Assembly: GCF_963921235.1 (NCBI RefSeq)
Contig: NC_086101.1
Coordinates: 11,098,001 to 11,162,000, forward strand
DNA: 64,000 nt
Source: Mobula hypostoma
Lineage: Eukaryota
Direction of reading: 5' to 3'
The position numbers and the translations under genes were made by a program. The notes under the pieces are model-generated. The model was given only the letters and a program-made list of their open reading frames with translations. It did not search any database and was not told the origin of the DNA. This document shows positions 6,736 to 54,119 of this stretch, piece by piece; the first letter of the stretch is position 1, and the number at the start of each line of letters is the position of its first letter.

Positions 6736-7624
6736 CCCCTCAAGCTGCTCTATTTGCTGTTTTTTTTAGTAATAGCTCTAATATCTACTTTGGCCTGCAC
6801 CCTATCACAGTCATTATACCATCTCTCCGCTGTACAGGACTTGACAACTTAAAACTTCTTATTTTTCCAATTGTGATTAAAGGTCCTTGGTCCAAAATAT
6901 TGACTCTTTTACTTTGCATGTGTTGCCTGGCCTGCTGAATGCTTCAGAAATTTGCTATACACCACAATGCATTTTACTAAAATATAATTTTCCATTTCTG
7001 AACAAAAGTGGTGTTGCATTGGATAATTTTCTTTTGTTTCCACAATTTTATCCTTTATTCTTTGCCATGTATTAAAAGCCCAGACTGCACTTAACTCTCC
7101 TTAAGTTAGTCTATACTTAGTCATTTGTTTAAACTTTGGGAGAATTTCTCCTTGTGTATATCTTATAGAAAAAAAGAAATAACACGAAAAAATACATGAA
7201 GTGTAATTTTCTGACAGTTAAAATCTCAATTGTACTCTGCCTCCATTTGCAGCCCCGGTTGGGTCACCTGGAGGAGGTTGTATGATGTTGAAAGACCCGA
7301 AACACCCGATGATTCCAGGAACATCACTGAAGATGTGTCCAGAAGCATCAATAGATGTATGTACACAGCTCAGTGCCTGAAATTGCTCGATCACTTGCTG
7401 GAGCTTTGTGAGAAATCTTGCTGCATATGTTGTTCATGACAAACTTTGTGTCACAGGAGGTACAGAGTTAACATTAGAAGGATTGTGAGGGCAGCCGTGG
7501 CCTGATGAAGAAACACTGATGCTAACAGCAGAGCTGCTTTCATAGGAACTGTCAGTTGATCAAAGGAAATCCAGCAGTTTAATTAGTTACAACTGGAGAA
7601 ATTATTCATGTACCTCAAACCAAA

Positions 7625-11575: not shown

Positions 11576-11749
11576 ACTGGTTTATAACTCACAAAAATAA
11601 AGATTCCAGACACAGGTATTCCAAACAGTTTCATTTATTTTCACTCTCTCCATTACATCGGTTTGTAGACAGCAGACAGTCCCAAAAGACCCGATGGACA
11701 GTTTGGGCGTCCTAAAATAATGCCCGTATCAGTGGCAGCAGGCACACTA

Positions 11750-13240: not shown

Positions 13241-16195
13241 TCATGGCTGATCATCCAACTCAGAACCCTGTACCTGCCTTCTCTCCATACTCCCAATCCC
13301 TTTAGCCACAAGGGCCATATCTAACTCCCTCTTAAATATAGCCAATGGACTGGCCTCAACTGTTTCCTGTGGCAGAGAAATCCACAGATTCACCACCCTC
13401 TGTGTGAAGAAGTTTTTCCCAATCTTGGTCCTAAAAGGCTTCCCCTTTATCCTCAAACTGTGACCCCTCGTTCTGGACTTCCCCAACATCTGGAACAATC
13501 TTTCTACTTCTAGCCTGTCCAATCCCATTAGGATTTTACACGTTTCAATAAGATCCCACCTCAATCTTCTAAATTCCACCGAGTAGAAGCCTAGTAGATC
13601 CAGTCTTTCATCATATGAAAGTCCTGCCATCCCAGGAGTCAATCTGGTGAACCTTCTTTGTACTCCCTCTATGGCAAGGATGTCTTTCCTCAGATTAGGG
13701 GACCAAAACTGCACACAATACTCCAGGTGTGGTCTCACCAAGGCCTTGCACAACTGCAGTAGTTCCTCCCTGCTCCTGTACTCGAATCCTCTCGCTATGA
13801 ATGTCAGCATACCATTCGCCTTTTTCACCGCCTGCTGTACCTGCATGCCCACTTTCAATGACTGGTGTATAAGGACACCCAGGTCTCGTTGCACCTCCCC
13901 TTTTTCTAATTGGCCACCATTCAGATGATAATCTGTTTTCCTGTTTTTGTCACCAAAGTGGATAACCTCACATTTATCCACATTAAATTGCATCTGCCAT
14001 GAATTTGCCCACTCACCTAACCTATCCAAGTCACCCTGCATCCTCTCAGCATCCTCCTCACAGCTAACACTGCCACCCAGCTTCGAGTCATCCACAAACT
14101 TGGAGATGCTGCATTTAGTTCCCTCATCTAAGTCATTAATATATATTGTAAAAAACTGGGGTCCCAGCACTGAGCCTTGCAGTACCCCACTAGTCACTGC
14201 CTGCCATTCTGTAAAGGTCCCATTTATTCCCACTCTTTGCTTCCTGTCTGCTAACCAATTCTCTATCCACATCAATACCTTACCCCCAATACCGTGTGCT
14301 TTAAGTTTGCACACTAATCTCCTGTGTGGGACCTTGTCAAAAGCCTTTGGAAAATCCAAATATACCACATTCACTGGTTCTCCCCTATCCACTCTACTAG
14401 TTACATCCTCAAAAAATTCTATGAGATTCGTCAGACATGATTTTCCTTTCACAAATCCATGCTGACTTTGGCCAATGATTTCACCGCTTTCCAAATGTGC
14501 TGTTATCACATCTTTGATAACTGAATCTAGCAGTTTCCCCACCACCAATGTTAGGCTAACCGATCTATAATTCCCCAGTTTCTCTCTCCCTCCTTTTTTA
14601 AAAAGCAGGGTAACATTAGCCACCCTCAAATCCTCAGGAACTAGTCCAGAATCTGAAGAGTTTTGAGAAATCATCACTAATGCATCCACTATTTCTTGGG
14701 CTACTTCCTTAAGCACTCTGGGATGCAGACCATCTGGCCCTGGGGATTTATCTGCCTTTAATCCCTTCAATTTACCTAACACTACTTCCCTACTAACATG
14801 TATTTCCCTCAGTTCCTCCATCTCACTAGACCCTCTGTCCCCTACTATTTCTGGAAGATTATTTATGTCCTCCTCAGTGAAGACAGAACCAAAGTAGTTA
14901 TTCAATTGGTCTGCCATGTCCTTGTTCCCCATAATCAATTCACCTGTTTCTGTCTGTAAGGGATCTACATTTGTCTTAACCAATCTTTTTCTTTTCACAT
15001 ATCTATAAAAGCTTTGACAGTCAGTTTTTATGTTCCCTGCCAGTTTTCTCTCATAATCTCTTTTCCCTTTCCGAATTAAGCCCTTTGTCCTCCTCTGCTG
15101 AACTCTGAATTTCTCCCAGTCCTCAGGTGAGCCGCTTTTTCTGGCTAATTTGTATGTTTCTTCTTTGGAATTGATACTATCCTTAATTTCCCTCATCAGC
15201 CACGGGTGCACTACCTTCCCTGATTTATTCTTTTGCCAAACTGGGATGAACAATTGTTGTAGTTCATCCATGCAATCTTTAAATGCTTGCCATTGCATAT
15301 CCACCATCAACCCTTTAAGTGTCATTTGCCAGTCTATTTTAGCTCGTTCACGCCTCATACCTTCAAAGTTACCCATCTTTAAGTTCAGAACCATTGTTTC
15401 TGAATTAACTATGTCACTCTCCATCTTAATGAAGAATTCCACCAGATTATGGTCACTCTTACCTAAGGGGCCTCTCACGACAAGACTGCTAATTAACCCT
15501 TCCTCATTGCTCAATACCCAATCTTGAATGGCCTGCTCTCTAGTTGGTTCCTCGACATGTTGGTTCAAAAAACCATCCCGCATACATTTCAAGAAATCCT
15601 CTTCCTCAGCACCCTTACCAATTTGGTTCACCCAGTCTGTATGTAGATTGAAGTCACCCATTATAACTGCTGTTCCTTTATTGCACACATTTCTAATTTC
15701 CTGTTTAATGCCATCCCCAACCTCACTACTACTGTTAGGTGGCCTGTACACAACTCCCACCAGTGTTTTATGCCCCTTAGTGTTATGCAGCTCTACCCAT
15801 ATCGATTCCACATCCTCCCGGCTAACGTCCTTCCTTTCTTTTGCGTTAACCTCCTCTCTAACCAGCAACGCCACCCCACCTCCTTTTCTTTCATGTCTAT
15901 CCCTCCTGAATATTGAATATCCCTGAATGTTGAGCTCCCATCCTTGGTCACCCTGGAGCCATGTCTCTGTGATCCCAACTATATCATAATCATTAATAAC
16001 AGTCTGCACTTTTAATTCATCCACCTTATTACGAATGCTCCTTGCATTGACACACAAACCCTTCAGGCTCGCTTTTACAACACTCTTGGCCCTTATACAA
16101 TTATGTTCAAAAGTAGCCCTTTTTGATTTTTGCCTTGGCTTTGCCGGCCTGCCACTTTTACTTTTCACCTTACTACTTTTTGCTTCTACACTCAT
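13241..16195 (-). CDS. CR1 ORF2: APE endonuclease plus reverse transcriptase, open 984 aa
   Basis: Endonuclease motifs ITETW, VVYRPP, MGDFN and SDH. RT motifs YLDFPKAFD, QGSVLGP and KFVDD (family norm KFADD). Confidence 0.93.
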   Translation of the reverse strand: MSVEAKSSKVKSKSGRPAKPRQKSKRATFEHNCIRAKSVVKASLKGLCVNARSIRNKVDELKVQTVINDYDIVGITETWLQGDQGWELNIQGYSIFRRDRHERKGGGVALLVREEVNAKERKDVSREDVESIWVELHNTKGHKTLVGVVYRPPNSSSEVGDGIKQEIRNVCNKGTAVIMGDFNLHTDWVNQIGKGAEEEDFLKCMRDGFLNQHVEEPTREQAIQDWVLSNEEGLISSLVVRGPLGKSDHNLVEFFIKMESDIVNSETMVLNLKMGNFEGMRRERAKIDWQMTLKGLMVDMQWQAFKDCMDELQQLFIPVWQKNKSGKVVHPWLMREIKDSINSKEETYKLARKSGSPEDWEKFRVQQRRTKGLIRKGKRDYERKLAGNIKTDCQSFYRYVKRKRLVKTNVDPLQTETGELIMGNKDMADQLNNYFGSVFTEEDINNLPEIVGDRGSSEMEELREIHVSREVVLGKLKGLKADKSPGPDGLHPRVLKEVAQEIVDALVMISQNSSDSGLVPEDLRVANVTLLFKKGGREKLGNYRSVSLTLVVGKLLDSVIKDVITAHLESGEIIGQSQHGFVKGKSCLTNLIEFFEDVTSRVDRGEPVNVVYLDFPKAFDKVPHRRLVCKLKAHGIGGKVLMWIENWLADRKQRVGINGTFTEWQAVTSGVLQGSVLGPQFFTIYINDLDEGTKCSISKFVDDSKLGGSVSCEEDAERMQGDLDRLGEWANSWQMQFNVDKCEVIHFGDKNRKTDYHLNGGQLEKGEVQRDLGVLIHQSLKVGMQVQQAVKKANGMLTFIARGFEYRSREELLQLCKALVRPHLEYCVQFWSPNLRKDILAIEGVQRRFTRLTPGMAGLSYDERLDLLGFYSVEFRRLRWDLIETCKILMGLDRLEVERLFQMLGKSRTRGHSLRIKGKPFRTKIGKNFFTQRVVNLWISLPQETVEASPLAIFKRELDMALVAKGIGSMERRQVQGSELDDQP

Positions 16196-16297
16196 TTTAC
16201 ACCCCTCTGTCTCTCTGCACTTGCTCCCATCCCCCTGTTGTGAACTAACCTCCTCTCTCCTAGTCTTTTCAATTTGATTCCCACCCCCCCAACCATT

Positions 16298-32475: not shown

Positions 32476-32964
32476 ATTCTCCACTCATGAGAGATCAGGA
32501 ACCCTATACTTCCTGATAGCACCCCAGCAACATTTCCCAGCTACAATTCCCATTGGACTTGCCAGCAATGGTCAGAGTGTTGTTGAATCTTCGGGAACAA
32601 CTGGTTTAAACATGTACAGGCACAATATTTTTACTAATATGATACTGTGATGATTGTACCTTTATATTACTGAACATTATACTGTTCCGGAGTATGTAAA
32701 TACATTTTACTAATCTAATTATCAAAATCTTGACAATAATTTCCCTATTTTCATACAAGTTTGTTGGTTAGAAATGTTCCCTACATTTCTAAAGTGAGGT
32801 GGGGGCTCAGTGCTGAACCTGGTGCTCCTTTGCCAAGGAACTTGTCCCCACCTTGTGTGGAAAGGCCAAGGACAGTTTTTCTCAGGTTATTGGGTTGGTG
32901 AACATTGGTGCTGAGGACAGTGAGGGAGGGGATGCTCACAGCTTCCGTCAAATGACAGGAATAA

Positions 32965-32966
<2 letters not shown>

Positions 32967-33004
<38 letters not shown>
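32967..33004. repeat. (TC)19 microsatellite upstream of the candidate leader exon
   Basis: Visible TC run. Confidence 0.95.
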
Positions 33005-33006
<2 letters not shown>

Positions 33007-33080
33007 CCACTACCCCACTCCCCCTCCCTACAACCCCTCTCTCTCTCCCAGCTTGTCAGCCTCTCGACTCTTCTGCTGAG

Positions 33081-33138
33081 ATGAGAGTGATTCACTGCAC
33101 TCTGCTGTTACTGAATGAGATTCTCATCTCACTCCAAG
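33081..33138 (+). CDS. Candidate signal-peptide exon of the butyrophilin-like gene (MRVIHCTLLLLNEILISLQ-G)
   Basis: ATG, 19 codons plus 1 nt, then donor CAAG/GTAATT. Its phase 1 joins in frame to the IgV exon. A polypyrimidine tract and AG at 33050-33051 suggest the exon starts at 33052. The core is hydrophobic but contains N-E. Confidence 0.6.
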
Positions 33139-39395: not shown

Positions 39396-40830
39396 AATTG
39401 TTTAAAAAGGGTTCTAGAGTAAACCTAGCCATTATCGGCCTGTGAGTTTGACATCAGTGGTGGGTAAATTGATGGAAAGTATTCTTAGACATGGTATATA
39501 TAATTGTCTGGATAGACAGGGTCTGATTAGGAACAGTCAACATGGATTTGTGCGTGGAAGGTCATGTTTGACAAATCTTATTGAATTCTTTGAAGAGGTT
39601 ACTAGGAATGTTGACAAGAGTAAAGCGGTGGACGTTGTCTATATGGACTTCAGTAAGGCCTTTGACATGGTCTCACATGGAAGGTTAGTTAGGAAGCTAC
39701 AATCGTTATGTATTAATATTGAAGTAGTAAAATGGATTCAGCAGTGGCTGGATGGGTGACGCCAGAGAGTGGTGGTGGATAACTGTTTGTCAGATTGGAG
39801 GCCGGTGACTGGTAGTGTGCCTCAGGGATCTGTACTGGCCCAATGTTATTTGTCATATACACTAATGATCTCGATGATGGGGTGGTAAATTGGATGAGTA
39901 AGTATGCAGATGATACTAAGATAGGTGGAGTTGTGGATAATGAAGTAGGTTTTCAAAGCTTGCAGAGAGATTTAGGCCAGTTAGAAGAGTAGGCTGAAAG
40001 ATGGCAGATGAGTTTAATGCTCATAAATGTGAGGTGCTACACTTTGGTAGGACTAATCAAAATAGGACATACATGGTAAATGGTAGAGCATTGAAGAATG
40101 CAGTAGAACAGAGGTATCTAGGAATAATGGTGCATAGTTCCCTGAAGGTGGAATCTCCTGTGGATAGGTTAGTGAAGAAAGCTTTTGGTATGCTGGCCCT
40201 TATAAATCAGAGCATTGAGTATAGGAGTTGGGATGTAATGTTTAAATTATACAAGACATTGGTGAGGCCAAATTCGGAGTATTGTGTACAGTTTTGGTCA
40301 CCAAATTATAGGAAAGATGTCAACAAAATAGAGAGAGTACAGAGAAGGTTTACTAGAATGTTACCTGGGATTCATCACCTAAGTTACAGAGAAAGGTCGA
40401 ACAAGTTAGTTCTTTATTCTTTGGAACGTAGAAGGTTGAGGGGGGACTTGATAGAGGTATTTAAAATTATGAGAGGGATAGATAGAGTTGACATGGATAG
40501 GCTTTTTTCCATTGAGAGTGGGGGAGATTCAAACAAAAGGACATGAGTTGAGAGTTAGGGGGCAAAAGTTTAGGGGTAACATGAGGAGGAACTTCTTTAC
40601 TCAGAGAGTGGTAGCTGTGTGGACGAGCTTCCAGCAGAAGTGGTTGAGACAGGTTCAATGTTGTCGTTTAAAGTTAACTTGGACAGCTGAATGGACAGGA
40701 AAGGAATGGAGGGTTATGGGCTCAGTGTAGATCGGTGGGACTAGGTGAGAGTAAGAGTTCAGCACGGACTAGAAGGGCCGAGATGGCCTGTTTCTGTGCT
40801 GTAATTGTAATATGATTATATGGTTATATG
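39395..40830 (+). mobile_element. CR1 RT 3' fragment (copy a), left flank of IgV exon 1
   Basis: ORFs 39442..39759 (YMDFSKAFD) and 40001..40546, with an (atatggtt)-type tail near 40810-40830. Confidence 0.9.
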
Positions 40831-43800
40831 GTAATCAAAATCGTAATACTTTTTGAGACTTTTTTCATTTGAGTTCACAGTCCTGGTTGTGTTGTAGTTG
40901 ATCTGTATATTGGCTAACAGGTTCCTGATCAATGTTCAATATGGGTTCCTTGTCTCTCAATTATTTCTCTCCAGGTGATTTTATCCTACTTGTACCCGAA
41001 GAGCCTTTTGTAGCAATTGCAGGTGAAGATGTTGTACTGGAATGTGAGCTGCTCCCACCAACCTCTGCCAGCAACATGACAGTGCAGTGGCTGAAATCAG
41101 GTCTCAGTTCACCCATCCACATGTACAGACAGGGACAAGATGATCCCCTCGCCCAACACCAGGATTACAGAGGAAGGACAGAACTGTTTAAAGATGAAAT
41201 TACCGAAGGAAACATTTCCCTCAGATTAAAGAACGTAAGGCCAGACGATGAAGGGCGATATACATGTTCAGTTAAAGACAGAATTGACTTCAAACAAGCT
41301 ACAGTTGAACTGCGTGTTCACAGTGAGTATTATTGCCATTTGTACCAAGGTATAGTGGGAAGCTTTTGTTTTGCATGCCATCCAGATAGATCATCTCATA
41401 CACAAGTATATTGAGGTAGTAAAAATAAAACAATGTGGAATATAGTGCTGTTGTTGCAGAGAAATTACAGTGCAAGTAATTACACAATTAGACAATATGG
41501 TGTGAGGGCTGCATTGAGTTAGACTGGGGCTACAAGTGTTCATATCTCAGTGTGTGAGATGTCCATTCAGGAGTTTGATAACCATGGCATAGAAACTGTC
41601 CTCTAGTCTGGTGGTTTGTGCTCTCGGGGCTTAGTATCTTCTGCTCAATGGGAGAGGAGAAAAGAGAGAATGACAAGGGTGGGTGGGGTCGGTGATTATA
41701 TCGGCTGCTTTCCCAACCTAGTGGGAAGTGTAGACAGAATCAGTGGAAGAGTCTGGTTTGCATGAAGGATCAGGCTTTGTTCACAACTCTTCAGTTTCTT
41801 CTCAAATCTTAGTCACAGAGTCATAGAAAAGTCCAACACAGAAACAGGCCCTCTGTCCCATGTAGTCAATGCTGGATCATTTGAATTGCCTACCCCCATC
41901 GACTTGCACTGGGACCATGGCCGTCCACCCCCCTGCCAACCATGTACAGTACCTAACCAAACTTCTCTTCAACATTGAAATCGACCTTGCATGCTCTGCT
42001 TGTGTTGGCAGCTTATTCCATACTCTCAGGAACCTCCGAGTGAAGAAGTTTTCCCTCAGAAGCTCACTAAACTTTTCACCTTTCACCCTTAACTCATGAA
42101 CTCTGGTTGTAGTCTCACCCAACCTCAATGGAAAAAGACTGCTTGCATTTACCCTATTTATATCCCTCATTATATTGTATACAGCTGTCAAATCTTCTGT
42201 CAGTCCTCTGCGTTCCAAGGAAAGAAGTCCTAACCTATTCAATCTTTCCGCAACTCAGATCCTCCAGACCTGATAACATTTTTGTAAAGTTTCTCTGTAC
42301 TCTTTCAAACTTATTTACATCTTTCCTGTAGCTGGGTGACCAAAACTGTACGCAATACTCCAAATAATACAACTTCAACATCGCAACCCATCTCCTGTAA
42401 TCAAAACTTTCATATATGAAACATCTTCAAGCCAAGAAAAGTCAAGTTACTTTTATTGTTATTTCGAACATAACGGCTGGTACAGTACACAGTAAAAACG
42501 AGACAATGTTTTTCAGGGCCATGGTGCTACATGGAACAATACAAAACTACACTGAACTATGTAAAACTACGCAAAAACTACACTAGACTGCAGACCTACC
42601 CAGGACTGCATGAAGTGCACAAAACAGTGCAGGCATTACAATAAATAATAACAAACAAGACAATAGCACAGTAGAGGGCAGAAGGTTGGTGTCGGTCCAG
42701 GCTCTGGGTATTGAGGAGTCTGACGGCTTGGGGGAAGAAACTATTACACAGTCTGGTCGTGAGAGCCCGAATGCTTCGGTGCCTTTTGCCAGATGGCAGG
42801 AAGGAGAAGAGTTTGTATGAGGGGTGCGTGGGGTCCTTCATAATGCTGTTTATCTTGTGCCCTCCCTCCTACACCAACTCCTTAGCCAAATGTTAAAGGG
42901 TGTAATCTTCCTTTTTTTGTCCTCAATAACATTTGGCATGGGTAGCAATCCTGAGATCATAACCCTGGATGTCCTGCCCTTTAACTTGGCACCTAACTCC
43001 CTGAACTCACTTTGCAGAACAGCATCACTCTTCCTACCTATGCCATTGGTGCCTACATTGACCACATCCTCTGGCTGTTGACCATCCAACTTTGGAATGC
43101 TGAGGACTCGATCCAAGATGTCCAGGAGCTTGGCACCTGGGACGCAACATAACATCCAGGAATCTTGTTTTCATCCGCAGAACCTCTTTTCCGTTCTCCT
43201 AGGTAAACAAATAGACAATAGGTGCAGGAGTAGGCCATTCTGCCTTTCGAGCCAGCACCGCCATTCACTGTGATCATGGCTGATCATTTACAATCAGTAC
43301 CCCGTTCCTGCCTTCTCCCCATATCCCCTCACTCCGCTATCATTAAGAGCTCTATCTAACTCTTTCTTGAAAGCATCCAGAGAACTGGCGTCCACTGCCT
43401 TCTGAGGCAGAGCATTCCACAGATCCACAACTCTCTGGGTGAAAAAGTATTTCCTCAACTCCGTTCAAAATGGCCTAGCCCTTGTACTCAAATTGTGGCC
43501 TCTGGTTCTGGACTCCCTCAACATCGGGAACATGTTTCCTGCCTCTAGCATGTCCAATCCCATAATAATCTTATATGTTTCATCAGATTCCCTCTCATCC
43601 TTCTAAATTCCAATGTATACAAGCCCAATTGCTCCAATCTTTCAACATATGACAGTCCCGCCATCCGGGGAATTAACCTTGTGAACCTCTGCTGCACTCT
43701 CTCAGTATCAAGAATGTCCTTCCTCAAATTTGGAGACCAAAATTGTAAACAATACTCCAGCACGAGGACATCTGCAGATGCTGGAATTTCAAGCAACACA

Positions 43801-46193
43801 CATAAAAGTTGCTGGTGAACGCAGCAGGCCGGGCAGCATCTCTAAGAAGTGGTACAGTCGACATTTCGGGCCGAGACCCTTCGTCAGTCCTGACGGTACC
43901 CCACTAGTCACTGCCTGCCATTCTGAAAGGGACCCGTTAATCCCAACTCTTTGTTTCCTGTCTGCCAATCAATTTTCTATCCATGTCAGTACCCTACCCC
44001 CAATACCATGTGCTCTAATTTTGACCATTAATCTCCTATGTGAGACCTTATCAAAGGCTTTCTGAAAGTCCAGGTACACTTCATCCACTGACTCTCCCCT
44101 GTCCATTTTCATAGTTACATCCTCAAAAAATTCCAGAAGATTAGTCAAGCACGATTTCCCCCTTCGTAAATCCATGCTGACTCGGACCAATCCTGTTACT
44201 ACTATCCAAATGTGCTGCTATTTCATCCTTTATAATTGACTCCAGCGTCTTCCCCACCACTGATGTCAGGCTAACTGGTCTATAATTCCCTGTTTTCTCT
44301 CTCCCTCCTTTCTTAAAAAGTGGGATAGCATTAGCTACCCTTCAGTCCTCAGCAACCGATCCTGAATCTATAGAACATTAGAAAATAATTACCAATGCAT
44401 CCACGATTTCTAGAGCCACCTCCTTAAGTACCCTGGGGTGCAGACCTTCAGGCCCTGGGGATTTATCAGCCTTCAGTCCCATCAGTCTATCCGAAACCAT
44501 TTTCTGTCTACTGTGAATCTCCTTCAGTTCCTCCATTACCTTAGGTCCTCCGGCCACTATTACATCTGGGAGATTGTTTGTGTCTTCCCTAGTGAAGCCA
44601 GATCCAAAGTACCTGTTCAACTTGTCTGCCATTTCCTTGTTCCCCGTAATAAATTCACCCGTTTCTGTCTTCAAGGGCCCAACTTTGGTCTTAACTAATA
44701 TTTTCCTCTTCAGACTCCTAAAGAAGTTTTAACTAACCTCCTTTATATTCTTGGCTAGCTTGCCTTCGTATCTCATCTTTTCTCCAGGTATTGCCTTTTT
44801 AGTTATCCTCTGTTGCTCTTTAAAAGTTTTCCAATCCTCTGGCTTCCCGCTCATCTTTGCTATGTTATACTTTTTCTCTTCTATTTTTATACTATCCTTG
44901 ACTTCCCTTGTCAGCCACGGTCGCCCCTTACTCCCCTTAGAACCTTTCTTCCTCTTTGGAATGAAGTGATCCTGCAGCTTTGTATTATTCCCAGAAATAC
45001 CTGCAATTGTTGTTCCACTGTCATCCCTGCTAGGGTATTTTTCCAGTCAACTTTGGCCAGTCCTCCCTCATGACTCCATAGTCCCCATTGTTCAACTGTA
45101 ATACTGACACTTCCGATCTTCCCTTTTCCCTCTCAAATTGTAGTTTAAAACTTATCATATTATGGTCACTACCTCCTAATGGCTCCTTTACCTCGAGTTC
45201 CCTTATCAAATCTGGTTCATTACACAACGCTAAATCCAGAATTGCCTTCTCCCTGGTAGGCTCCAGTACAAGCTGCTCTAAGAATCCATCTCGGAGGCAC
45301 TCCACAAACTCCTTTTCTTGGGGTCCAGTACCAACCTGATTTTCCCAGTCTTCCTGCATGTTAAAATCTCCCATAACAACTGTAGCATTACCTTTGTGAC
45401 ATGCCAATTTTAACTCTTGATTCAACTTGCACCCTATATCCAGGCTACTGTTTGGTGGCCTGTAGATAACTCCCATTAGGGTCTTTTTGCCCATACAATT
45501 TCTCAGTTCTATCCATACTGACTCTACATCTCCTGATTCTATGTCCCCCCTCGCAAGGGACTGAATTTCAATCCTCACTAACAGAGCCACCCCACACCCT
45601 CTGCCCACCTGTCTGTCCTTTCGATAGGACGTATATTCTTGAATATTCATTTCCCAGCCCTGGTCCTCTTGCAGCCATGTCTCTGTTATTCCCACAACAT
45701 CATACTTGCCAATTTCCAACTGAGCCTCAAGCTCATCCACTTTATTTCTTATACTTCGCGCATTAATATATAATACTTTTAATCCTTTACTCCCTCACCT
45801 TTCACATCGATTCCTATTGCAATTGGCCATTCTCTCCGATCCCTTCCTGAGCTTTCTGCCCCGTTAATTCTGTTGTCTTTCTTAACTTTCCTTATTCTCT
45901 CTTTCCCTTTAACTCCATCCTTATATTTCCTCTCCTCCCCCCGACTACTAAGTTTAAACACACCCGTGCAGCAGTGGAAAACCTACCTGCCAGAATGCTG
46001 GTCCCCCGCCTGTTAAGGTGCAACCCGTCCCTTTTGTACAATTCATCCTTGCCCCAAAACAGATCCCAGTGGTCTAAGAATCTAAATCCCTGCTTCCCGC
46101 ACCAGCTCCTCAGCCACACATTCGGATCCCTTATCTCCCTGTTCCTGTCCTCAACAGCACAAGGAACTGGAAGCAAACCGGACATAACCGGTT
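40149..46193 (+). repeat. Tandem duplication unit 1 (6045 bp)
   Basis: Collinear with 46194-53395: CR1(+), IgV exon, Rex1 and CR1 fragments, CR1(-) with a Penelope filler, and the junction ggacataaccggtttggaatc. Confidence 0.93.
40975..41322 (+). CDS. Butyrophilin/B7-family IgV exon 1
   Basis: Acceptor ttatttctctccAG and donor A/GTGAGT, 348 nt, phase 1-1. It has the V-set hallmarks VLEC, VQW, YRGRTELFKD, ISLRLKNV and DEGRYTC. The specific family member cannot be named from one domain. Confidence 0.92.
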
Positions 46194-47020
46194 TGGAATC
46201 TCATGTGGATAGGGTGGTGAAGAAAGCTTTTGGTATGCTAGCCTTTATAAATCAGAGCATTGAGTATAGGAGTTGGGATGTAATGTTGGAATTGTACAAG
46301 GCATTGCTGAGGCCAAATTTAGTGTATTGTGTACAGTTTTGGTCACCAAATTATAGGAAAGATGTCAACAAAATAGAGAGAGTACAGAGAAGATTTACTA
46401 GAATGTTACCTGGGTTTCATCACCTAAGTTACAGAGAAAGGTTGAACAAGTTGGGTCTTTATTCTTTGGAATATAGAAGGTTGAGGGGGGACTTGATAGA
46501 GGTATTTAAAATTATGAGGAGGATAGATAGAGTTGGCGTGGATAGGCTTTTTCCATTGAGAGTGGGGGAGATTCAAACAAAAGGACATGAGTTGACAGTT
46601 AGGGGGCAAAAGTTTAGGGGTAACATGAGGAGGAACTTCTTTACTCAGCGAGAGGTAGCTGTGTGGAACGAGCTTCCAGCAGAAGTGGTTGAGGCAGGTT
46701 CGATGTTGTTGTTTAAAGTTAAATTGGACAGCTGTATGGACAGGAAAGAAATGGAGGGTTATGGGCTGAGTGCAGGTAGGTGGGGACTAGGTGAGAGTAA
46801 GAGTTCGGTATGGACTAGAAGGGCCGAGATGGCCTGTTTCCGTGCAGTAATTGTTGTATGATTACATGGTTATATGGTAATCAAAATCGTAATACTTTTT
46901 GAGACTTTTTTCATTTGAGTTCACAGTCCTGGTTGTGTTGTAGTTGATTTGCATATTGGCTAACAGGTTCCTGATCAATGTTCAATATGGGTTCCTTGTT
47001 TCTCAATTATTTCTCTCCAG

Positions 47021-47368
47021 GTGATTTTATCCTACTTGTACCCGAAGAGCCTTTTGTAGCAATTGCAGGTGGAGATGTTGTACTGGAATGTGAGCTGTTC
47101 CCACCAACCTCTGCCAGCAACATGACAGTGCAGTGGCTGAAATCAGGTCTCAGCTCACCCATCCACGTGTACAGACATGGGCAAGATGATCCCCTCGCCC
47201 AACACCAGGATTACAGAGGAAGGGCAGACCTGTTTAAAGATGAAATTACCGAAGGAATCATTTCCCTCAGATTAAAGAACGTAAGGCCAGATGATGAAGG
47301 GCAATATACATGTTCAGTTGAAGACAGAACTGACTTCAAACAATCTACAGTTGAACTGCATGTTCTCA
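47021..47368 (+). CDS. Butyrophilin/B7-family IgV exon 2 (duplicate)
   Basis: Same acceptor and donor, 348 nt, open frame, both Cys and the Trp retained. It has 16 nucleotide differences from exon 1. Confidence 0.9.
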
Positions 47369-50300
47369 GTGAGTATTATTGCCATTTGTACCACGGTGTA
47401 GTGGGAAGCTTTTGTTTTGCATGCCATCCAGATCGATCATTTCATACACAAGTATAGTGAGGTAGTAATAAGAAAACAATGTGGAACATAGTGCTGTTGT
47501 TGCAGAGAAATTACAGTGCAAGTAATTACACAATTACACAATAAGTTGTGAGGGCTGTATTGAGTTAGACTGGGGCTACAAGTGTTCATATCTCAGTGTG
47601 TGAGATGTCCATTCAGGAGTTTGATAACCATGGCATAGAAACTGTCCTCGAGTCTTGTGGTCCGTGCTCTTGGGGCTTTGTATATTCTGCTCAGTGGGAA
47701 AGGGGAAAAGAGAGAATGACAAGGGTGGGTGGGGTCGGTGATTATATCGGCTGCTTTCCCAACCCAGTGGGAAGTGTAGACAGAATCAGTGGAAGAGTCT
47801 GGTTTGCATGAAGGACAGGTTTTTTTCACAACTCTTCAATTTCTTCTCAAACCTTAGTCACAGAGACATAGAGAAGTCCAACACAGAAACAGGCCCTTCG
47901 GCCCATGTAGTCATGCTGGACCACTTAAATTGCCTACTCCCATCGACTTGCACTGGGACCATGGCCCTCCACCCCCCTGCCAACCATGTACAGTACCTAA
48001 CCAAACTTCTCTTCAACATTGAAATCGACCTTGCATGCTCTGCTTGTGTTGGCAGCTTGTTCCACACTCTCAGGAACCTCCGAGTGAAGAAGTTTTCCCT
48101 CAGAAGCTCATTAAACTTTTCACCTTTCACCCTTAACTCATGAACTCTGGTTGTAGTCTCACCCAACCTCAATGGAAAAAGACTGCTTGCATTTACCCTA
48201 TCAATACAGCTCATTATATTGTATACATCTGTCAAATCTTCTGTCAGTCCTCTGCGTTCCAAGGAAAGAAGTCCTAACCTATTCAATCTTTCCTCAACTC
48301 AGATCCTCCAGACCTGATAACATTTTTGTAAAGTTTCTCTCTACTCTTTCAAACTTATTTACATCTTTCCTGTAGGTGGGTGACCAAAATTGTACACAAT
48401 ACTCCAAATAATACAACTTCAACATCGCAACCCATCTCCTGTAGTCAAAACTTTCATATATGAAATATCTTCAAGTCAAGAAAAGTCAAGTTACTTTTAT
48501 CGTCATTTCGACCATAACGGCTGGTACAGTACACAGTAAAAACGAGACAACTTTTTTCAGGACCATGGTGCTACATGAAACAATACAAAACTACGCAAAA
48601 ACTACACTAGACTGCAGACCTACCCAGGACTGCATAAAGTGCACAAAAACAGTGCAGACATTACAATAATTAATAACAAACAAGACAATAGCACAGTAGA
48701 TGGCAGAAGGTTGGTGTCAGTCCAGGCTCTGGGTATTGAGGAGTCTGATGGCTTGGGGGAAGAAACTGTTACACAGTCTGGTCGTGACAGCCCGAATGCT
48801 TCGGTGCCTTTTGCCAGATGGCAGGAAGGAGAAGAGTTTGTATGAGGGGTGCATGGGGTCCTTCATAATGCTGTTTATCTTGTGCCCTCCCTCCTACACC
48901 AACTCCTTAGCCAAATGTTAAAGGGTGTAATCTTCCTTTTTTTGTTCTCAATAACATTTGGCATGGGTAGCAATCCTGAGATCATAACCCTGGATGTCCT
49001 GCCCTTTAACTTGGCACCTAACTCCCTGAACTCACTTTGCAGAACAGCGTCACTCTTCCTACCTATGCCATTGGTGCCTACATTGACCATAACCTCTGGC
49101 TGTTGACCATCCAACTTTGGAATGCTGAGGACTCGATCCAAGATGTCCAGGAGCTTGGCACCTGGGACGCAACATAACATCCAGGAATCTTGTTTTCATC
49201 CGCAGAACCTCTTTTCAGTTCTCCTAGGTAAACAATAGACAATAAGTGCAGGAGTAGGCCATTCTGCCTTTCGAGCCAGCACCGCCATTCACTGTGATCA
49301 TGGCTGATCATTTACAATCAGTACCCCGTTCCTGCCTTCTCCCCATATCCCCTCACTCCGCTATCATTAAGAGCTCTATCTAACTCTTTCTTGAAAGCAT
49401 CCAGAGAACTGGCATCCACTGCCATCTGAGGCAGAGCATTCCACAGATCCACAACTCTCTGGGTGAAAAAGTATTTCCTCAACTCCGTTCAAAATGGCCT
49501 CCCCTTGTACTCAAATTGTGGCCTCTGTTTCTGGACTCCCTCAACATCGGGAACATGTTTCCTGCCTCTAGCGTGTCCAATCCCTTAATAATTTTATATG
49601 TTTCATCAGATCCCTTCTCATCCTTCTAAATTCCAGTGTATACAAGCCCAGTTGCTCCAGTCTTTTAATGTATGACAGTCCCGCCATCCCGGGAATTAAC
49701 CTTGTGAACCTCTGCTGCACTCTCTCAATATCAAGAATGTCCTTCCTCAAATTTGGAGACCAAAATTGTAAACAATACTCCAGCACGAGGACATCTGCAG
49801 ATGCTGGAATTTCAGGCAACACACATAGAAGTTGATGGTGAACGCAGCAGGCCAGGCAGCATCTCTAAGAAGTGGTACAGTCGACATTTCGGGCCGAGAC
49901 CCTTCGTCAGTCCTGACGGTACCCCACTAGTCACTGCCTGCCATTCTGAAAGGGACCCGTTAATCCCAACTCTTTGTTTCCTGTCTGCCAATCAATTTTC
50001 TATCCATGTCAGTACCCTACCCCCAATACCACGTGCTCTAATTTTGACCATTAATCTCCTATGTGAGACCTTATCAAAGGCTTTCTGAAAGTCCAGGTAC
50101 ACTTCATCCACTGACTCTCCCCTGTCCATTTTCATAGTTACATCCTCAAAAAATTCCAGAAGATTAGTCAAGCACGATTTCCCCCTTCATAAATCTATGC
50201 TGACTCGGACCAATCCTGTTACTGCTATCCAAATGTGCTGCTATTTCATCCTTTATAATTGACTCCAGTATCTTCCCCACCACTGATGTCAGGCTAACTG

Positions 50301-51318
50301 GTCTATAATTCCCTGTTTTCTCTCTTCCTCCCTTCTTAAAAAGTGGGATAACATTAGCTACCCTTCAGTCCTCAGCAACTGATCCTGAATCTATAGAACA
50401 TTAGAAAATAATTACCAATGCATCCACGATTTCTAGAGCCACCTCCTTAAGTACCCTGGGGTGCAGACCTTCAGGCCCTGGGGATTTATCAGCCTTCAGT
50501 CCCATCAGTCTATCCGAAACCATTTTCTGTCTAATGTGAATCTCCTTCAATTCCTCCATTACCCTAGGTCCTCCGGCCACTATTACATCTGGGAGATTGT
50601 TTGTGTCTTCCCTAGTGAAGCCAGATCCAAAGTACCTGTTCAACTTGTCTGCCATTTCCTTGTTCCCTGTAATAAATTCACCCGTTTCTGTCTTCAAGGG
50701 CCCAACTTTGGTCTTAACTAATATTTTCCTCTTCACATTCCTAAAGAAGCTTTAACTATCCTCCTTTATATTCTTGGCTAGCTTGCCTTCGTATCTTATC
50801 TTTTCTCCCCGTATTGCCTTTTTAGTTATCCTCTGTTGCTCTTTAAAAGTTTCCCAATCCTCTGGCTTCCCGCTCATCTTTGCTATGTTATACTTTTTCT
50901 CTTCTATTTTTATACTATCCTTGACTTCCCTTGTCAGCCACGGTCACCCCTTACTCCCCTTAGAACCTTTCTTCCTCTTTGGAATGAAGTGATCCTGCAG
51001 CTTCTGTATTATTCCCAGAAATACCTGCAATTGTTGTTCCACTGTCACCCTGCTAGGGTATCTTTCCAGTCAACTTTGGCCAGTCCTCCCTCATGACTCC
51101 ATAGTCCCCTTTGTTCAACTGTAATACTGACACTTCCGATTTTCCCTTCTCCCTCTCAAATTGTAGTTGAAAACTTATCATATTATGGTCACTACCTCCT
51201 AATGGCTCCTTTACCTCGAGTTCCCTTATCAAATCTGGTTCATTACACAACACTAAATCCAGAATTGCCTTCTCCCTGGTAGGCTCCAGTACAAGTTGCT
51301 CTAAGAATCCATCCAGGA

Positions 51319-52488
51319 CAGCGGTCCCCAACCACCGGGCCGCGGAGCATTTGCTACCGGACCACGAGGAAACGATATGATTTGGCGATATGAGTCAGCT
51401 GCACGGTTCCTCATTCCCTGTCACGCACTGTTGAGCTTGAACACAGGCGAGGTCATTAACAGCGCGTCATCCATGTCAGCGAGGGAAGAAGATCAACTCC
51501 TTGAGCTTGCAAGTGATGGCGGGCTGAAAAGTATGTTTGACATAACATCTCTGCCGGCATTCTGGATCAAAGTCAAGGCTAAATATCCTGAGATAGCCAC
51601 GAAAGAACTGAAAACGTTGCTTCCATTTCCAACATACCGCTGCAATGAATGCGATGAAAACTAAATAGACTGGACATAAGGAACCTCCTTCAAGTATCAC
51701 TGTCTCCCATCACCCCTCGATAGGACCGTCTTGTTGCAGGGAAACAAGCCCAGAGCTCCCACTGATTTAGCGATATTGGTGTGTTGCAATGATTTTATAT
51801 GTTCATACGGGGAAAATATATGCTGTGTGTTTAATATCCAAATGTTACTTAAAATGTTATGATGCCATTGACTGATAGTGACTTATATAACCATATAACA
51901 ATTACAGCACAGAAATAGGTAATCTCGGCCCTTCTAGTCCATGCCGAACGCTACTCTCACCTCGTCCCACCGACCTGCAATCAGCCCATACCCTTCCATT
52001 TCTTTCCTGTCCATATACCTATCCAATTTTTCTTTAAATAATATCGAACCTGCCTCTACCACTTCTACTGGAAGTTCCTTCAACACTTACTTCAAGCTCC
52101 CCGTCCTCCCCTGATGATTGACTTATCACTATATTCATGCGAGGAAAATATGCGCTGTGTTTTTAATATTAAATTCATTAGATAATCCCTTTTAGAAACG
52201 AAATTGAGTGTATTAGCCCCTTATTACCAATATTCCGGTCGCGATGAACACCCCCCCGCCCCCGAACAGAATCGCCAAAAACGCTTTGCAGAGAATAATA
52301 TCGGCAGGTACACGCATGCGCACTGGTGCCCGCACAAGGCTTCATGGTCATTGTAGTCTTTCTTTGACTGCTACTCTTGTCCATTGGCAACCCTACCCGC
52401 ACCGCCCCCCCACCCCCTCCTGGCCAGTCCGCAAGAATATTGTCAATATTAAACCAGTCCGCAGCGCAAAAAAGGTTGGGGACCCCTG
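51319..52488 (+). mobile_element. Non-autonomous hAT (Buster/Charlie-like) element, unit 2 only
   Basis: TIRs CAGCGGTCCCCAACC and GGTTGGGGACCCCTG, 8-bp TSD ATCCAGGA/ATCTAGGA, and a dimerisation-domain remnant FWIKVKAKYPEIA..LLPFPT. A CR1 tail fragment is nested near 51885-52085. Confidence 0.92.
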
Positions 52489-53395
52489 ATCTAGGAGGCA
52501 CTCCACAAACTCCCTTTCTTGGGGTCCAGTACCAACCTGATTTTCCCAGTCTACCTGCATGTTAAAATCCCCCATAACAACCGTAGCATTACCTTTGCGA
52601 CATGCCAATTTTAACTCTTGATTCAACTTGCACCCTATAGCCAGGCTACTGTTTGGGGGCCTGTAGATAACTCCCATTAGGATCTTTTTGCCCTTACAAT
52701 TTCTCAGTTCTATCCATACTGACTCTACATCTCCTGATTCTATGTCACCCCTCGCAAGGGACTGAATTTCGTTCCTCACCAACAGAGCCACCCCACCCCC
52801 TCTGCCCACCTGTCTGTCCTTTTGATAGGACGTATACCCTTGAATATTTATTTCCCAGCCCTGGTCCTCTTGCAGCCATGTCTCTGTTATTCCTACAACA
52901 TCATACTTGCCAATTTCCAACTGAGCCTCAAGCTCATCCACTTTTATTTCTTGTACTTCGTGCATTAATATATAATACTTTTAATCCATTACTCCCTCAC
53001 CTTTCACATCGATTCCTATTGCAATTGGCCATTCTCTCCGATCCCTTCCTGAGCTTTCTGCCCCGTTAATTCTGTTGTCTTTCTTAACTTTCCTTATTCT
53101 CTCTTTCCCTTTAATTCCATCCTTATATTTCCTCTCCTCCCCCCCCACTACTTAGTTTAAACACACCCGTGTAGTAGTGGAAAACCTGCCTGCCAGAATG
53201 CTGGTACCCCTCCTGTTAAAGTGCAACCAGTCCCTTTTGTACAATCATCCTTGCCCCAAAACAGATCCCAGTGGTCTAAGAATCTAAATCCCTGCTTCCT
53301 GCACCAGCTCCTCAGCCACACATTCGGATCCCTTATCTCCCTGTTCCTGCCCTCAACAGCACAAGGAACTGGAAGCAAACCGGACATAACCGGTT

Positions 53396-53706
53396 TGGAA
53401 TCTCATGTGGATAGGGTGGTGAAGAAAGCTTTTGGTATGCTGGCCTTTATAAATCAGAGCATTGAGTATAGGAGTTGGGATGTAATGTTGAAATTGTACA
53501 AGGCATTGCTGAGGACAAATTTAGAGTATTGTGTACAGTTTTGGTCACCAAATTATAGGAAAGATGTCAACAAAATAGAGAGAGTACGGAGAAGATTTAC
53601 TAGAATGTTACCTGGGTTTCATCACCTAAGTTACAGAGAAAGGTTGAACAAGTTGGGTCTTTATTCTTTGGAATGTAGAAGGTTGAGGGGGGACTTGATA
53701 GAGGTA
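53396..53706 (+). mobile_element. ~310-bp CR1 fragment (copy b) inside the ORF1 region of a minus-strand CR1
   Basis: Homologous to 40149-40459 and 46194-46504. It ends at gaggtac, where minus-strand CR1 5' sequence appears to resume. Confidence 0.85.
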
Positions 53707-54119
53707 CTTCAAATCCAACTCCTTAACACAGAGTGTTCGAAACCACGGCTGGATGCACTTCTCGTAGTTGTAGTTGTTGGGCTCCCTGTAAGTGGAACAT
53801 TCAACTATCCTGCCTGGCATCCCAGTTGTTCTATCTGAGAAAATATAAAGAAAGAAAAACAATAATAAGCTATGGGAAAATAATTATCTACAGCTTTTCA
53901 TTTTCTCTCACAAAAGCCTCTCCTCAGTGAAGCCTCGAAGAGCTGAAGCCTCAAAATCCCAATTCTATCTCTGTCTGCTCCACCGACGGTCATTCCAACA
54001 ATGGCTGCTCCACTTTCCCCAGCCTTATTTTAGTTTCTTCTTGTCAATCAATCCCGAATGCTGTGCTTCTCAAAGCTCCAATCTGCCCCGAGCTGCTGTC
54101 TTTTCTACTTAATTGGTGA

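What the first reader, a model, noticed from the sequence alone, without database searches (positions are those of the whole stretch)
40975..47368. Two intact, frame-compatible IgV exons in one butyrophilin-like gene: a possible exon-level receptor diversification module
Seen: two 348-nt phase 1-1 IgV exons 6046 bp apart, both open with canonical splice sites. The duplicated unit has no recognisable leader or promoter of its own, and only one candidate leader lies upstream. Inference: this is an intragenic exon duplication, so one gene could make L-V1, L-V2 or L-V1-V2 products in frame. Established: mammalian BTN/BTNL proteins usually carry IgV-IgC and engage gamma-delta TCRs through the IgV domain. 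A V-V or switchable-V architecture in a cartilaginous fish would be unusual.
Basis: partly seen in the sequence, partly recalled or inferred. Interest (0 to 1): 0.8.

Follow-up and report, generated by a model that had tools for sequence, protein, structure and literature searches.

The report
Expressed two-IgV butyrophilin gene in ray
A devil-ray butyrophilin-type immune gene carries its outermost domain exon twice, because a 6-kb stretch was duplicated between two LINE copies; RNA splices both copies into one message, and NCBI's public annotation already models this.

Summary
Two open 348-nt, phase 1-1, AG/GT-flanked IgV exons lie at 40975-41322 and 47021-47368. They sit in a 6,045-bp tandem duplication that is about 96% identical and bracketed by direct copies of a 5'-truncated LINE 3' end.

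The gene runs far past the window: leader 33081-33138, V1, V2, then IgC, TM and B30.2 exons up to about 57 kb beyond the window's end. The genome is Mobula hypostoma. RefSeq already models this gene as L-V1-V2-IgC-TM-B30.2 (XP_062904070 and XP_062904072 to XP_062904076).

RNA-like contigs from four samples carry the exact V1-to-V2 splice (41322 to 47021, GT..AG). Both exons are therefore used in cis. The "dead copy", "own leader" and "false haplotype join" refutations fail.

A paralogue 179 kb downstream has the same V-V pair, with RefSeq isoforms V1-V2 and V2-only. For the window's gene I found no sign of V switching. V-V(-V) butyrophilin-like models also occur in horn shark, catshark and skate, each from its own duplication.

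V1 and V2 differ as much as the surrounding intron, and dN/dS is about 1.3 on small counts. Selection on the second V is not shown.

This is a real, expressed architectural variant of a known family. It is already in public annotation and is of modest interest. This scan had noted the same stretch before (s1-144003).

The parts
7251..7355 (+). Upstream exon used by RefSeq isoforms X1 and X2 of this gene. It is read there as part of a 51-54 aa N-terminal extension. It is probably 5'UTR, since isoform X3 starts at the leader ATG.
   Evidence: tblastn of P0152 residues 7-41, 100% identity
33081..33138 (+). Leader (signal peptide) exon. It encodes MRVIHCTLLLLNEILISLQ plus one base, with donor GTAATT, phase 1. 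It is the only leader of the gene.
   Evidence: first residues of XP_062904074-76 (P0270)
40149..40828 (+). LINE-a, the 3' end of a LINE ORF2 lying directly upstream of V1. Its part from 40149 onward starts tandem unit 1, and its first 319 bp form repeat R1.
40975..41322 (+). IgV exon V1, 348 nt, phase 1-1. It is the membrane-distal domain of the product.
40149..46193 (+). Tandem duplication unit 1, 6,045 bp. It holds LINE-a, V1, and intronic LINE fragments that lie mostly on the minus strand.
46194..53395 (+). Tandem duplication unit 2. It is 96.2% identical to unit 1 and carries an extra ~1.2-kb insertion at about 51314-52488 that is absent from unit 1 and from the paralogous locus.
47021..47368 (+). 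IgV exon V2, 348 nt, phase 1-1. It is spliced directly to V1 upstream, and to the IgC exon about 24 kb downstream, outside the window.
53396..53714 (+). Third, partial copy of the LINE repeat (R3), which closes the R-X-R-X-R structure. It is cut at 53714 here but is about 680 bp long in the paralogous locus.

Best explanation
The window holds the 5' half of a Mobula hypostoma butyrophilin-family gene. Its IgV exon was duplicated in tandem by unequal crossing-over between two direct copies of a 5'-truncated LINE 3' end, giving the structure R-X-R-X-R. Both exon copies are kept open and are spliced one after the other into the same mRNA. The product is a type I membrane protein with the order signal peptide, IgV, IgV, IgC, TM, juxtamembrane coil, B30.2 (PRY/SPRY), 590 aa in RefSeq isoform X3.

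Shown:
- exon anatomy
- the duplication and its LINE flanks
- the rest of the gene
- the V1-to-V2 splice in RNA-like contigs
- identity with the RefSeq models

Inferred:
- The protein sits at the cell surface with V1 distal and V2 as a second V or spacer. The G strand of V1 runs into the A strand of V2 through about 3 residues, so the three Ig domains form a rod one domain longer than normal butyrophilins.
- By homology to BTN2A1, BTN3A and BTNL3/8, it would engage a receptor such as a gamma-delta TCR through an IgV face and signal or sense through B30.2.
- The 13 V1/V2 differences include six on the C', F and G strands and the FG loop, plus loss of one N-glycan sequon in V2. The two domains need not bind the same thing.
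For: Exons and phases. V-set scores. Tandem duplication and its borders. R equals residues 819-1015 of a LINE endonuclease/RT ORF2 (E 9e-62; Pfam on that ORF).

Downstream IgC, TM and B30.2 exons on the same strand. Pfam on the full model gives V-set x2, C2-set_3, PRY and SPRY.

RefSeq proteins P0152, P0269 and P0270 match V1, V2, IgC and B30.2 at 100%.

Splice joint 41322 to 47021 with GT..AG is present in all four runs X25, X26, X16 and X27. The V1 side matches with no mismatch over 66-107 nt, which separates V1 from V2 and from both paralogous V exons. Flanking intron depth is about 0 against 12-68 on the exon.

A single leader.

The AlphaFold2 ectodomain model has mean pLDDT 82.8 and shows three consecutive Ig folds.

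Best solved relatives are BTN3A3, BTN3A1, BTN2A1, BTNL8 and BTNL3, E 1e-92 to 1e-71.
Against: - The RNA runs are labelled 'RNA?' (a guess) and are assembled contigs, not reads. They come from one study. They may be the same data NCBI used to build the models, in which case they are not independent of RefSeq; I did not establish this.
- No protein-level evidence exists.
- V1/V2 exon divergence (4.6%) equals non-exon divergence (3.7%; Fisher p 0.38), and dN/dS is 1.28 (13 N, 3 S; p 1.0). Retention of the second V by selection is therefore not shown.
- pTM is 0.51, so inter-domain geometry is uncertain.
- Ligand and function are inferred only from mammalian homologues.
Confidence: 0.85

Rival explanations
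1. Switchable-V module. The gene chooses between L-V1-C, L-V2-C and L-V1-V2-C by alternative splicing, so one locus offers alternative receptor-binding heads.
For: All junctions are phase-compatible. The paralogue 179 kb downstream has RefSeq isoforms with both V exons (XP_062904077, 581 aa) and with V2 only (XP_062904078, 465 aa). One X16 contig joins a leader-like sequence to a V exon start that was laid on V2.
Against: For the window's gene all three annotated protein forms contain V1 and V2. In all four runs the contig carrying the V1 3' end runs on into V2 by 30-56 nt without a break. In a de Bruijn assembly this argues against an appreciable V1-to-IgC branch (inference). The leader-to-V contig has a mismatch to this gene's leader. 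It could also equally be L-to-V1, because the first 51 nt of V1 and V2 are identical and V1's 5' part was not in the laid stretch.
Confidence: 0.15
2. Neutral passenger. The duplication is a recent accident of LINE-mediated unequal crossing-over. The extra V is included only because its splice sites were copied. It has no selected function and will decay.
For: Exon divergence is no lower than intron divergence, and dN/dS is about 1.3 and indistinguishable from 1. The duplication borders are repeats. The V2 N-glycan sequon NIS is lost.
Against: Both V exons are intact in two paralogous loci, four of four, with Cys/Trp core residues kept. The whole family shows a high dN/dS of 0.66, as immune V domains often do, so a high ratio does not by itself mean decay. 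V-V(-V) forms recur in three other elasmobranch lineages. None of this is decisive.
Confidence: 0.35
3. Assembly artefact. Two haplotypes of one V region were falsely joined in tandem.
For: The two units are near-identical and adjacent, which is the usual signature of such errors.
Against: The units differ by 3.8% and by a 1.2-kb insertion, and there is no gap in the window. RNA-like contigs splice V1 to V2, which needs both in cis. The same R-X-R-X-R layout exists at a second locus that is 93-94% identical.
Confidence: 0.02

Closest known systems
Human BTN3A1/BTN3A3, BTN2A1 and BTNL3/BTNL8 (butyrophilins, gamma-delta T-cell regulators)
   Same: They share the signal peptide, IgV, BTN-type IgC (Pfam C2-set_3), single TM, juxtamembrane coil and PRY/SPRY B30.2. 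They are the best solved-structure matches, E 7e-92 to 2.5e-71, with alignment through V-C-TM and B30.2. The Ig exons are phase 1.
   Different: The mammalian proteins have one IgV. This gene has two in tandem before the IgC. Ligand, partner chains and phosphoantigen sensing are untested here.
RefSeq models of this very gene and its paralogue in Mobula hypostoma (XP_062904070 and XP_062904072-76; XP_062904077/78)
   Same: They are 100% identical to the window's V1 and V2 and to the downstream exons. They already show L-V1-V2-IgC-TM-B30.2.
   Different: They are automatic predictions named 'butyrophilin subfamily 3 member A1-like'. The V-V feature, its LINE-mediated origin and its RNA support are not commented on anywhere I could find.
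V-V(-V) butyrophilin-like RefSeq models in Heterodontus francisci (P0161), Scyliorhinus canicula (P0179) and Amblyraja radiata (P0173)
   Same: They have two or three tandem IgV domains before IgC-TM-B30.2. The V copies of each protein are each other's closest relatives.
   Different: They arose by separate duplications in each lineage. The catshark and skate copies are about 99% identical. All are unverified predictions.
4Ig-B7-H3 (CD276) and BTNL2 (IgV-IgC-IgV-IgC), and HHLA2 (IgV-IgC-IgV). This comparison is from background knowledge and was not tested here, except that CD276 appears among the PDB hits.
   Same: They are B7/butyrophilin-superfamily members whose ectodomain was lengthened by exon duplication.
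   Different: There the duplicated block is a V-C pair or a non-adjacent V. Here only the V exon is doubled, giving V-V-C.

Membership tests
Butyrophilin (BTN/BTNL) family | N-terminal IgV (V-set) domain encoded by a phase 1-1 exon | tested here: met
   Pfam V-set E 6.5e-15 and 1.1e-12. Phases come from the sequence. The feature is present twice.
Butyrophilin (BTN/BTNL) family | Membrane-proximal BTN-type IgC domain | tested here: met
   Pfam C2-set_3 (BTN3A2-like Ig-C), E 4.4e-22, residues 254-337 of P0270. The exon lies about 7.7 kb beyond the window's end.
Butyrophilin (BTN/BTNL) family | Cytoplasmic B30.2 (PRY + SPRY) domain | tested here: met
   PRY E 9.9e-18 and SPRY E 1.9e-21. The exon lies about 57 kb beyond the window's end on the same strand.
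Butyrophilin (BTN/BTNL) family | Signal peptide and single transmembrane helix (type I topology) | tested here: inconclusive
   The leader MRVIHCTLLLLNEILISLQ and the stretch WVLPLVVTICVVIAANSTVIYW are hydrophobic and align to the BTN3A leader/TM region. No signal-peptide or TM predictor was run.
Butyrophilin (BTN/BTNL) family | Canonical ectodomain of one IgV followed by one IgC | tested here: not met
   There are two IgV before the IgC, in genome, RefSeq models and RNA contigs. It is therefore filed as an architectural variant, not a canonical member.
Butyrophilin (BTN/BTNL) family | Binding to a gamma-delta TCR or other immune receptor through the IgV | not testable with these tools
   No binding data exist. 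This is inferred from mammalian homologues only.
Alternative-exon (cassette V) diversification module | Transcripts that use V1 alone or V2 alone from this gene | tested here: inconclusive
   No such form was seen for gene A. Paralogue B has an annotated V2-only isoform.

The most novel reading that the evidence does not exclude
Elasmobranch butyrophilin genes repeatedly double their IgV exon, and at least in Mobula they use the pair as a regulated module: V1-V2 versus V2-only, as annotated for the paralogue. Gene conversion from neighbouring family members reshapes one copy's F-G face. This would give germline-encoded, exon-level diversification of ligands for innate-like (gamma-delta) T cells in the oldest jawed vertebrates.
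Probability: 0.12. Interest if true: 0.6.

Novelty: new variant of a known kind. Interest (0 to 1): 0.35.

Why it matters
Butyrophilins are germline-encoded regulators and ligands of gamma-delta T cells in mammals. How old this role is, and how their binding heads diversify, are open questions.

This locus is a clean, datable example of a repeat-mediated exon duplication. It immediately yields an expressed protein with an extra IgV domain, inside a ~1.1-Mb cluster of about eleven related V exons in a ray. Similar V-V(-V) models in a horn shark, a catshark and a skate suggest a recurrent route to longer or two-headed butyrophilins in cartilaginous fishes.

The practical value is limited. The gene model is already public, function is untested, and no selection on the second V is shown.

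Tried and rejected
I checked the downstream long ORFs and ran tblastn. This gene ends in B30.2, not NACHT.
- Exon-only tree of the ten family V exons. It was too poorly resolved to order the duplications, so I replaced it with 6-kb unit comparisons and quartet site counts.
- Test for orthologous pairing (A-V1 with B-V1, A-V2 with B-V2). It gets no support beyond noise, 14 against 16 sites, while 89 sites group the units by locus. I cannot tell one ancestral duplication plus concerted evolution from two independent crossovers at the same LINE pair.
- The leader-to-V contig in X16 as evidence for V1 skipping. I rejected it as ambiguous.
- Fetching 10-kb flanks of the single-V paralogues to see the pre-duplication R-X-R state.
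- Two literature searches on butyrophilins in sharks and cartilaginous fishes found nothing on tandem IgV forms.
- Pfam on the repeat's own ORF found nothing. Its LINE nature was shown instead by BLASTP to an intact LINE ORF2 in the window.
- The Mobula birostris genome cannot be reached with these tools. Its RefSeq proteins in the search results show only single-V forms, which is weak evidence either way.
Full report
**1. Observation**

The two exons are exactly as described. V1 is 40975-41322 and V2 is 47021-47368. Each is 348 nt, preceded by tctccAG and followed by GTgagt. Each is open in the phase 1-1 frame. Each scores as Pfam V-set, at 6.5e-15 and 1.1e-12.

They differ at 16 of 348 nt, 13 replacement and 3 silent. 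The window contains no N.

**2. The duplication**

Self-comparison shows a tandem repeat. Unit 1 is 40149-46193. Unit 2 is 46194-53395, which carries an extra ~1.2-kb insertion at about 51314-52488. A third, partial start lies at 53396-53714. Over about 6 kb the two units are 96.2% identical.

The segment repeated three times, R, translates to the last ~200 residues of a LINE endonuclease/reverse-transcriptase ORF2. BLASTP to the intact 1018-aa ORF at 13244-16297(-) gives E 9e-62, residues 819-1015. So R is the 3' end of a 5'-truncated LINE.

The first copy continues upstream as LINE. The second and third copies begin abruptly at the same base. In the paralogous locus the third copy runs about 680 bp, to the LINE's 3' end. 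In the window it is cut at 53714.

The layout R-X-R-X-R is what unequal crossing-over between two direct LINE copies produces. This agrees with an earlier scan note on the same stretch (s1-144003).

Single-V family members lose homology with unit 1 upstream of about 40820. The LINE just upstream of V1 is therefore specific to this sub-lineage. One paralogue, g10407, also matches 40284-40672.

**3. The gene**

The genome search places the window at C12:11098001-11162000 of a 3.48-Gb assembly. It finds about eleven related V exons between 10.18 and 11.33 Mb. These include a second pair 6,057 bp apart, 179 kb downstream.

I fetched 200 kb downstream and ran tblastn with a sawfish butyrophilin (P0073). 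This gives gene A as follows:

| Exon | Position |
|---|---|
| Leader | 33081-33138 |
| V1 | 40975-41322 |
| V2 | 47021-47368 |
| IgC | about 7.7 kb past the window's end |
| TM | about 37 kb past the window's end |
| Short juxtamembrane exon | next after the TM exon |
| B30.2 | about 57 kb past the window's end |

Leader DNA occurs once per gene. There is none inside the duplicated unit.

**4. It is already annotated**

Homologue searches return proteins whose longest contig on record has the window's contig length, 199,023,498 bases. They are named butyrophilin subfamily 3 member A1-like [Mobula hypostoma]. The gene A models are:

| Protein | Accession | Length |
|---|---|---|
| P0152 | XP_062904073 | 641 aa |
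| P0269 | XP_062904070, XP_062904072 | 644 aa |
| P0270 | XP_062904074, XP_062904075, XP_062904076 | 590 aa |

All three contain V1 and V2 back to back and match the genomic exons at 100%. P0270 starts at the leader ATG. The longer forms add an N-terminal extension from an upstream exon at 7251-7355, which is probably UTR.

Pfam on P0270 gives V-set x2, C2-set_3 (BTN-type IgC), PRY and SPRY. The best solved relatives are human BTN3A3, BTN3A1, BTN2A1, BTNL8 and BTNL3.

**5. RNA evidence**

Four RNA-like runs of organism A, from one study and kept as Logan contigs, were laid on 41173-47172 at 97% likeness or better.

- All four contain one contig with the joint 41322 to 47021 (GT..AG, skipping 5,698 nt). 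The depth of that contig, 11-74, is similar to the V1 exon depth.
- The V1 side matches without mismatch over 66-107 nt. This excludes V2, B-V1 and B-V2, which differ by 7, 4 and 1 nt over the 107-nt stretch.
- Intron next to V1 has about 0 depth.
- The contigs pass the V1 donor unbroken. They stop 30-56 nt into V2, where sequence becomes shared with V1's own start. This fits L-V1-V2 and gives no hint of a V1-to-IgC branch (inference from how such assemblies break).
- One X16 contig joins a leader-like sequence with one mismatch to a V start. V1 and V2 share their first 51 nt, and V1's 5' part was not in the laid stretch. The contig is therefore most simply an L-to-V1 junction or a paralogue's junction. 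It is not evidence for V1 skipping.

A spliced V1-V2 RNA needs both exons in cis, which disposes of the false-haplotype-join idea.

Caveats: the runs are only guessed to be RNA, they are contigs rather than reads, and they may be the data behind the RefSeq models.

**6. The paralogue and the order of events**

A segmental duplication (window 21630-64000 against +179 kb, 92-95% identity) carries gene B with the same leader, V1, V2, IgC and R-X-R-X-R layout. RefSeq gives gene B two isoforms:

- XP_062904077, 581 aa, L-V1-V2-...
- XP_062904078, 465 aa, L-V2-..., with V1 skipped

Unit identities are as follows:

| Pair | Identity |
|---|---|
| A1-A2 | 96.2% |
| B1-B2 | 94.5% |
| A to B | 93.8-94.4% |

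Among quartet-informative sites, 89 group the units by locus. Only 14 and 16 support the two alternatives. So either one old duplication has been homogenised within each locus, or the same LINE pair recombined independently in A and B. I cannot decide between these.

The last 68 nt of A-V2 differ by a single base from either of two other family members (g10407, g10248). A-V1, B-V1 and B-V2 share a derived block there. This discordance with the intron signal points to gene conversion across V exons.

**7. Selection**

V1 against V2 gives dN/dS 1.28, not different from 1 (Fisher p 1.0). Exon divergence is 4.6% against 3.7% for non-exon sequence (p 0.38). The family mean dN/dS is 0.66.

All ten close V exons are open and keep the core Cys and Trp residues.

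So the second V is intact and expressed, but selection for it is not demonstrated.

**8. Likely working**

AlphaFold2 on the ectodomain (5-sequence alignment) gives mean pLDDT 82.8, with three consecutive Ig folds. About 3 residues lie between the last strand of V1 and the first strand of V2. pTM is 0.51, so the angles are uncertain.

So short a linker rules out side-by-side pairing of V1 and V2 within one chain (inference). The product is best seen as a butyrophilin lengthened by one domain, with V1 distal.

The 13 V1/V2 differences are E17G, L26F, M49V, Q52H, T68A, E69D, N79I, R94Q, K100E, I103T, A108S, R113H and H115L. Six of them lie on the C', F and G strands and the FG loop by canonical IgV strand positions. 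N79I removes an N-glycan sequon in V2.

From background knowledge, BTN2A1 and BTNL3 use the CFG face to bind TCR V-gamma. Any such role here is inference.

**9. Comparison and novelty**

V-V or V-V-V butyrophilin-like RefSeq models also exist in Heterodontus francisci, Scyliorhinus canicula and Amblyraja radiata. In a tree the V copies of each protein pair with each other, which means separate duplications. Many multi-V predictions exist in teleosts.

Two literature searches found no paper on this.

**Verdict**

The finding is real, and the V-V reading is right and supported by RNA. It is an architectural variant of a known family that is already present in public annotation. The "switchable" reading is unsupported for this gene and only hinted at for its paralogue. 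Interest is modest.

Noticed in passing
outside the window: C12:11310338-11349359 (leader, V1 at 11318434-11318781, V2 at 11324491-11324838, IgC); loci L002, L003, L045-L049: A paralogous gene 179 kb downstream has the same V-V pair and the same LINE-flanked layout. RefSeq gives it one V1-V2 isoform (XP_062904077) and one V2-only isoform (XP_062904078).
   Followed up: yes
window 47301-47368 versus 41255-41322: The last 68 nt of V2 differ by one base from either of two other family members (g10407, g10248). V1 and both V exons of the paralogue share a different, derived block. This conflicts with the intron phylogeny and suggests gene conversion affecting the F-G part of the domain.
   Followed up: partly
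window 51314-52488: A ~1.2-kb insertion is present only in tandem unit 2. It is absent from unit 1 and from both units of the paralogous locus, so it is younger than the duplication. Its ORF had no Pfam match.
   Followed up: partly
window 53714 and L038 (about C12:11332093-11332990): The third LINE repeat is cut at 319 bp in this locus. In the paralogous locus it runs about 680 bp and is split by a 2.2-kb insertion. The two loci have therefore been remodelled separately after duplication.
   Followed up: partly
window 7251-7355: An upstream exon, 26 kb before the leader, is used by RefSeq isoforms X1 and X2. It is read there as a 51-54 aa N-terminal extension that would bury the signal peptide, so it is likely a 5'UTR exon with a spurious upstream ATG.
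   Followed up: partly
window 13244-16297 (-): An uninterrupted 1018-aa LINE ORF2 with endonuclease and reverse-transcriptase domains. It is possibly a young or active element of the family that supplied the crossover repeats.
   Followed up: partly
window 9255-11712 (+): Fragments of an LTR-retrotransposon pol gene (integrase zinc-binding domain and RT).
   Followed up: partly
outside the window: about C12:11250003-11253585 (-), loci L039-L040: Minus-strand butyrophilin remnants between the two genes: an IgC-like piece and a B30.2 piece with several stop codons. This is a pseudogene.
   Followed up: no
window 32962-33005: A (CT)n microsatellite of about 44 bp followed by a C-rich tract lies directly upstream of the leader exon. 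The acceptor at 33050-33051 shows the leader exon is internal in some transcripts.
   Followed up: no
C12:10.18-11.33 Mb (loci L001-L011): About eleven closely related IgV exons (83-93% aa identity, one at 50%) are spread over 1.1 Mb, all open with identical splice-site contexts. This is a large butyrophilin cluster with family-wide dN/dS of about 0.66.
   Followed up: partly
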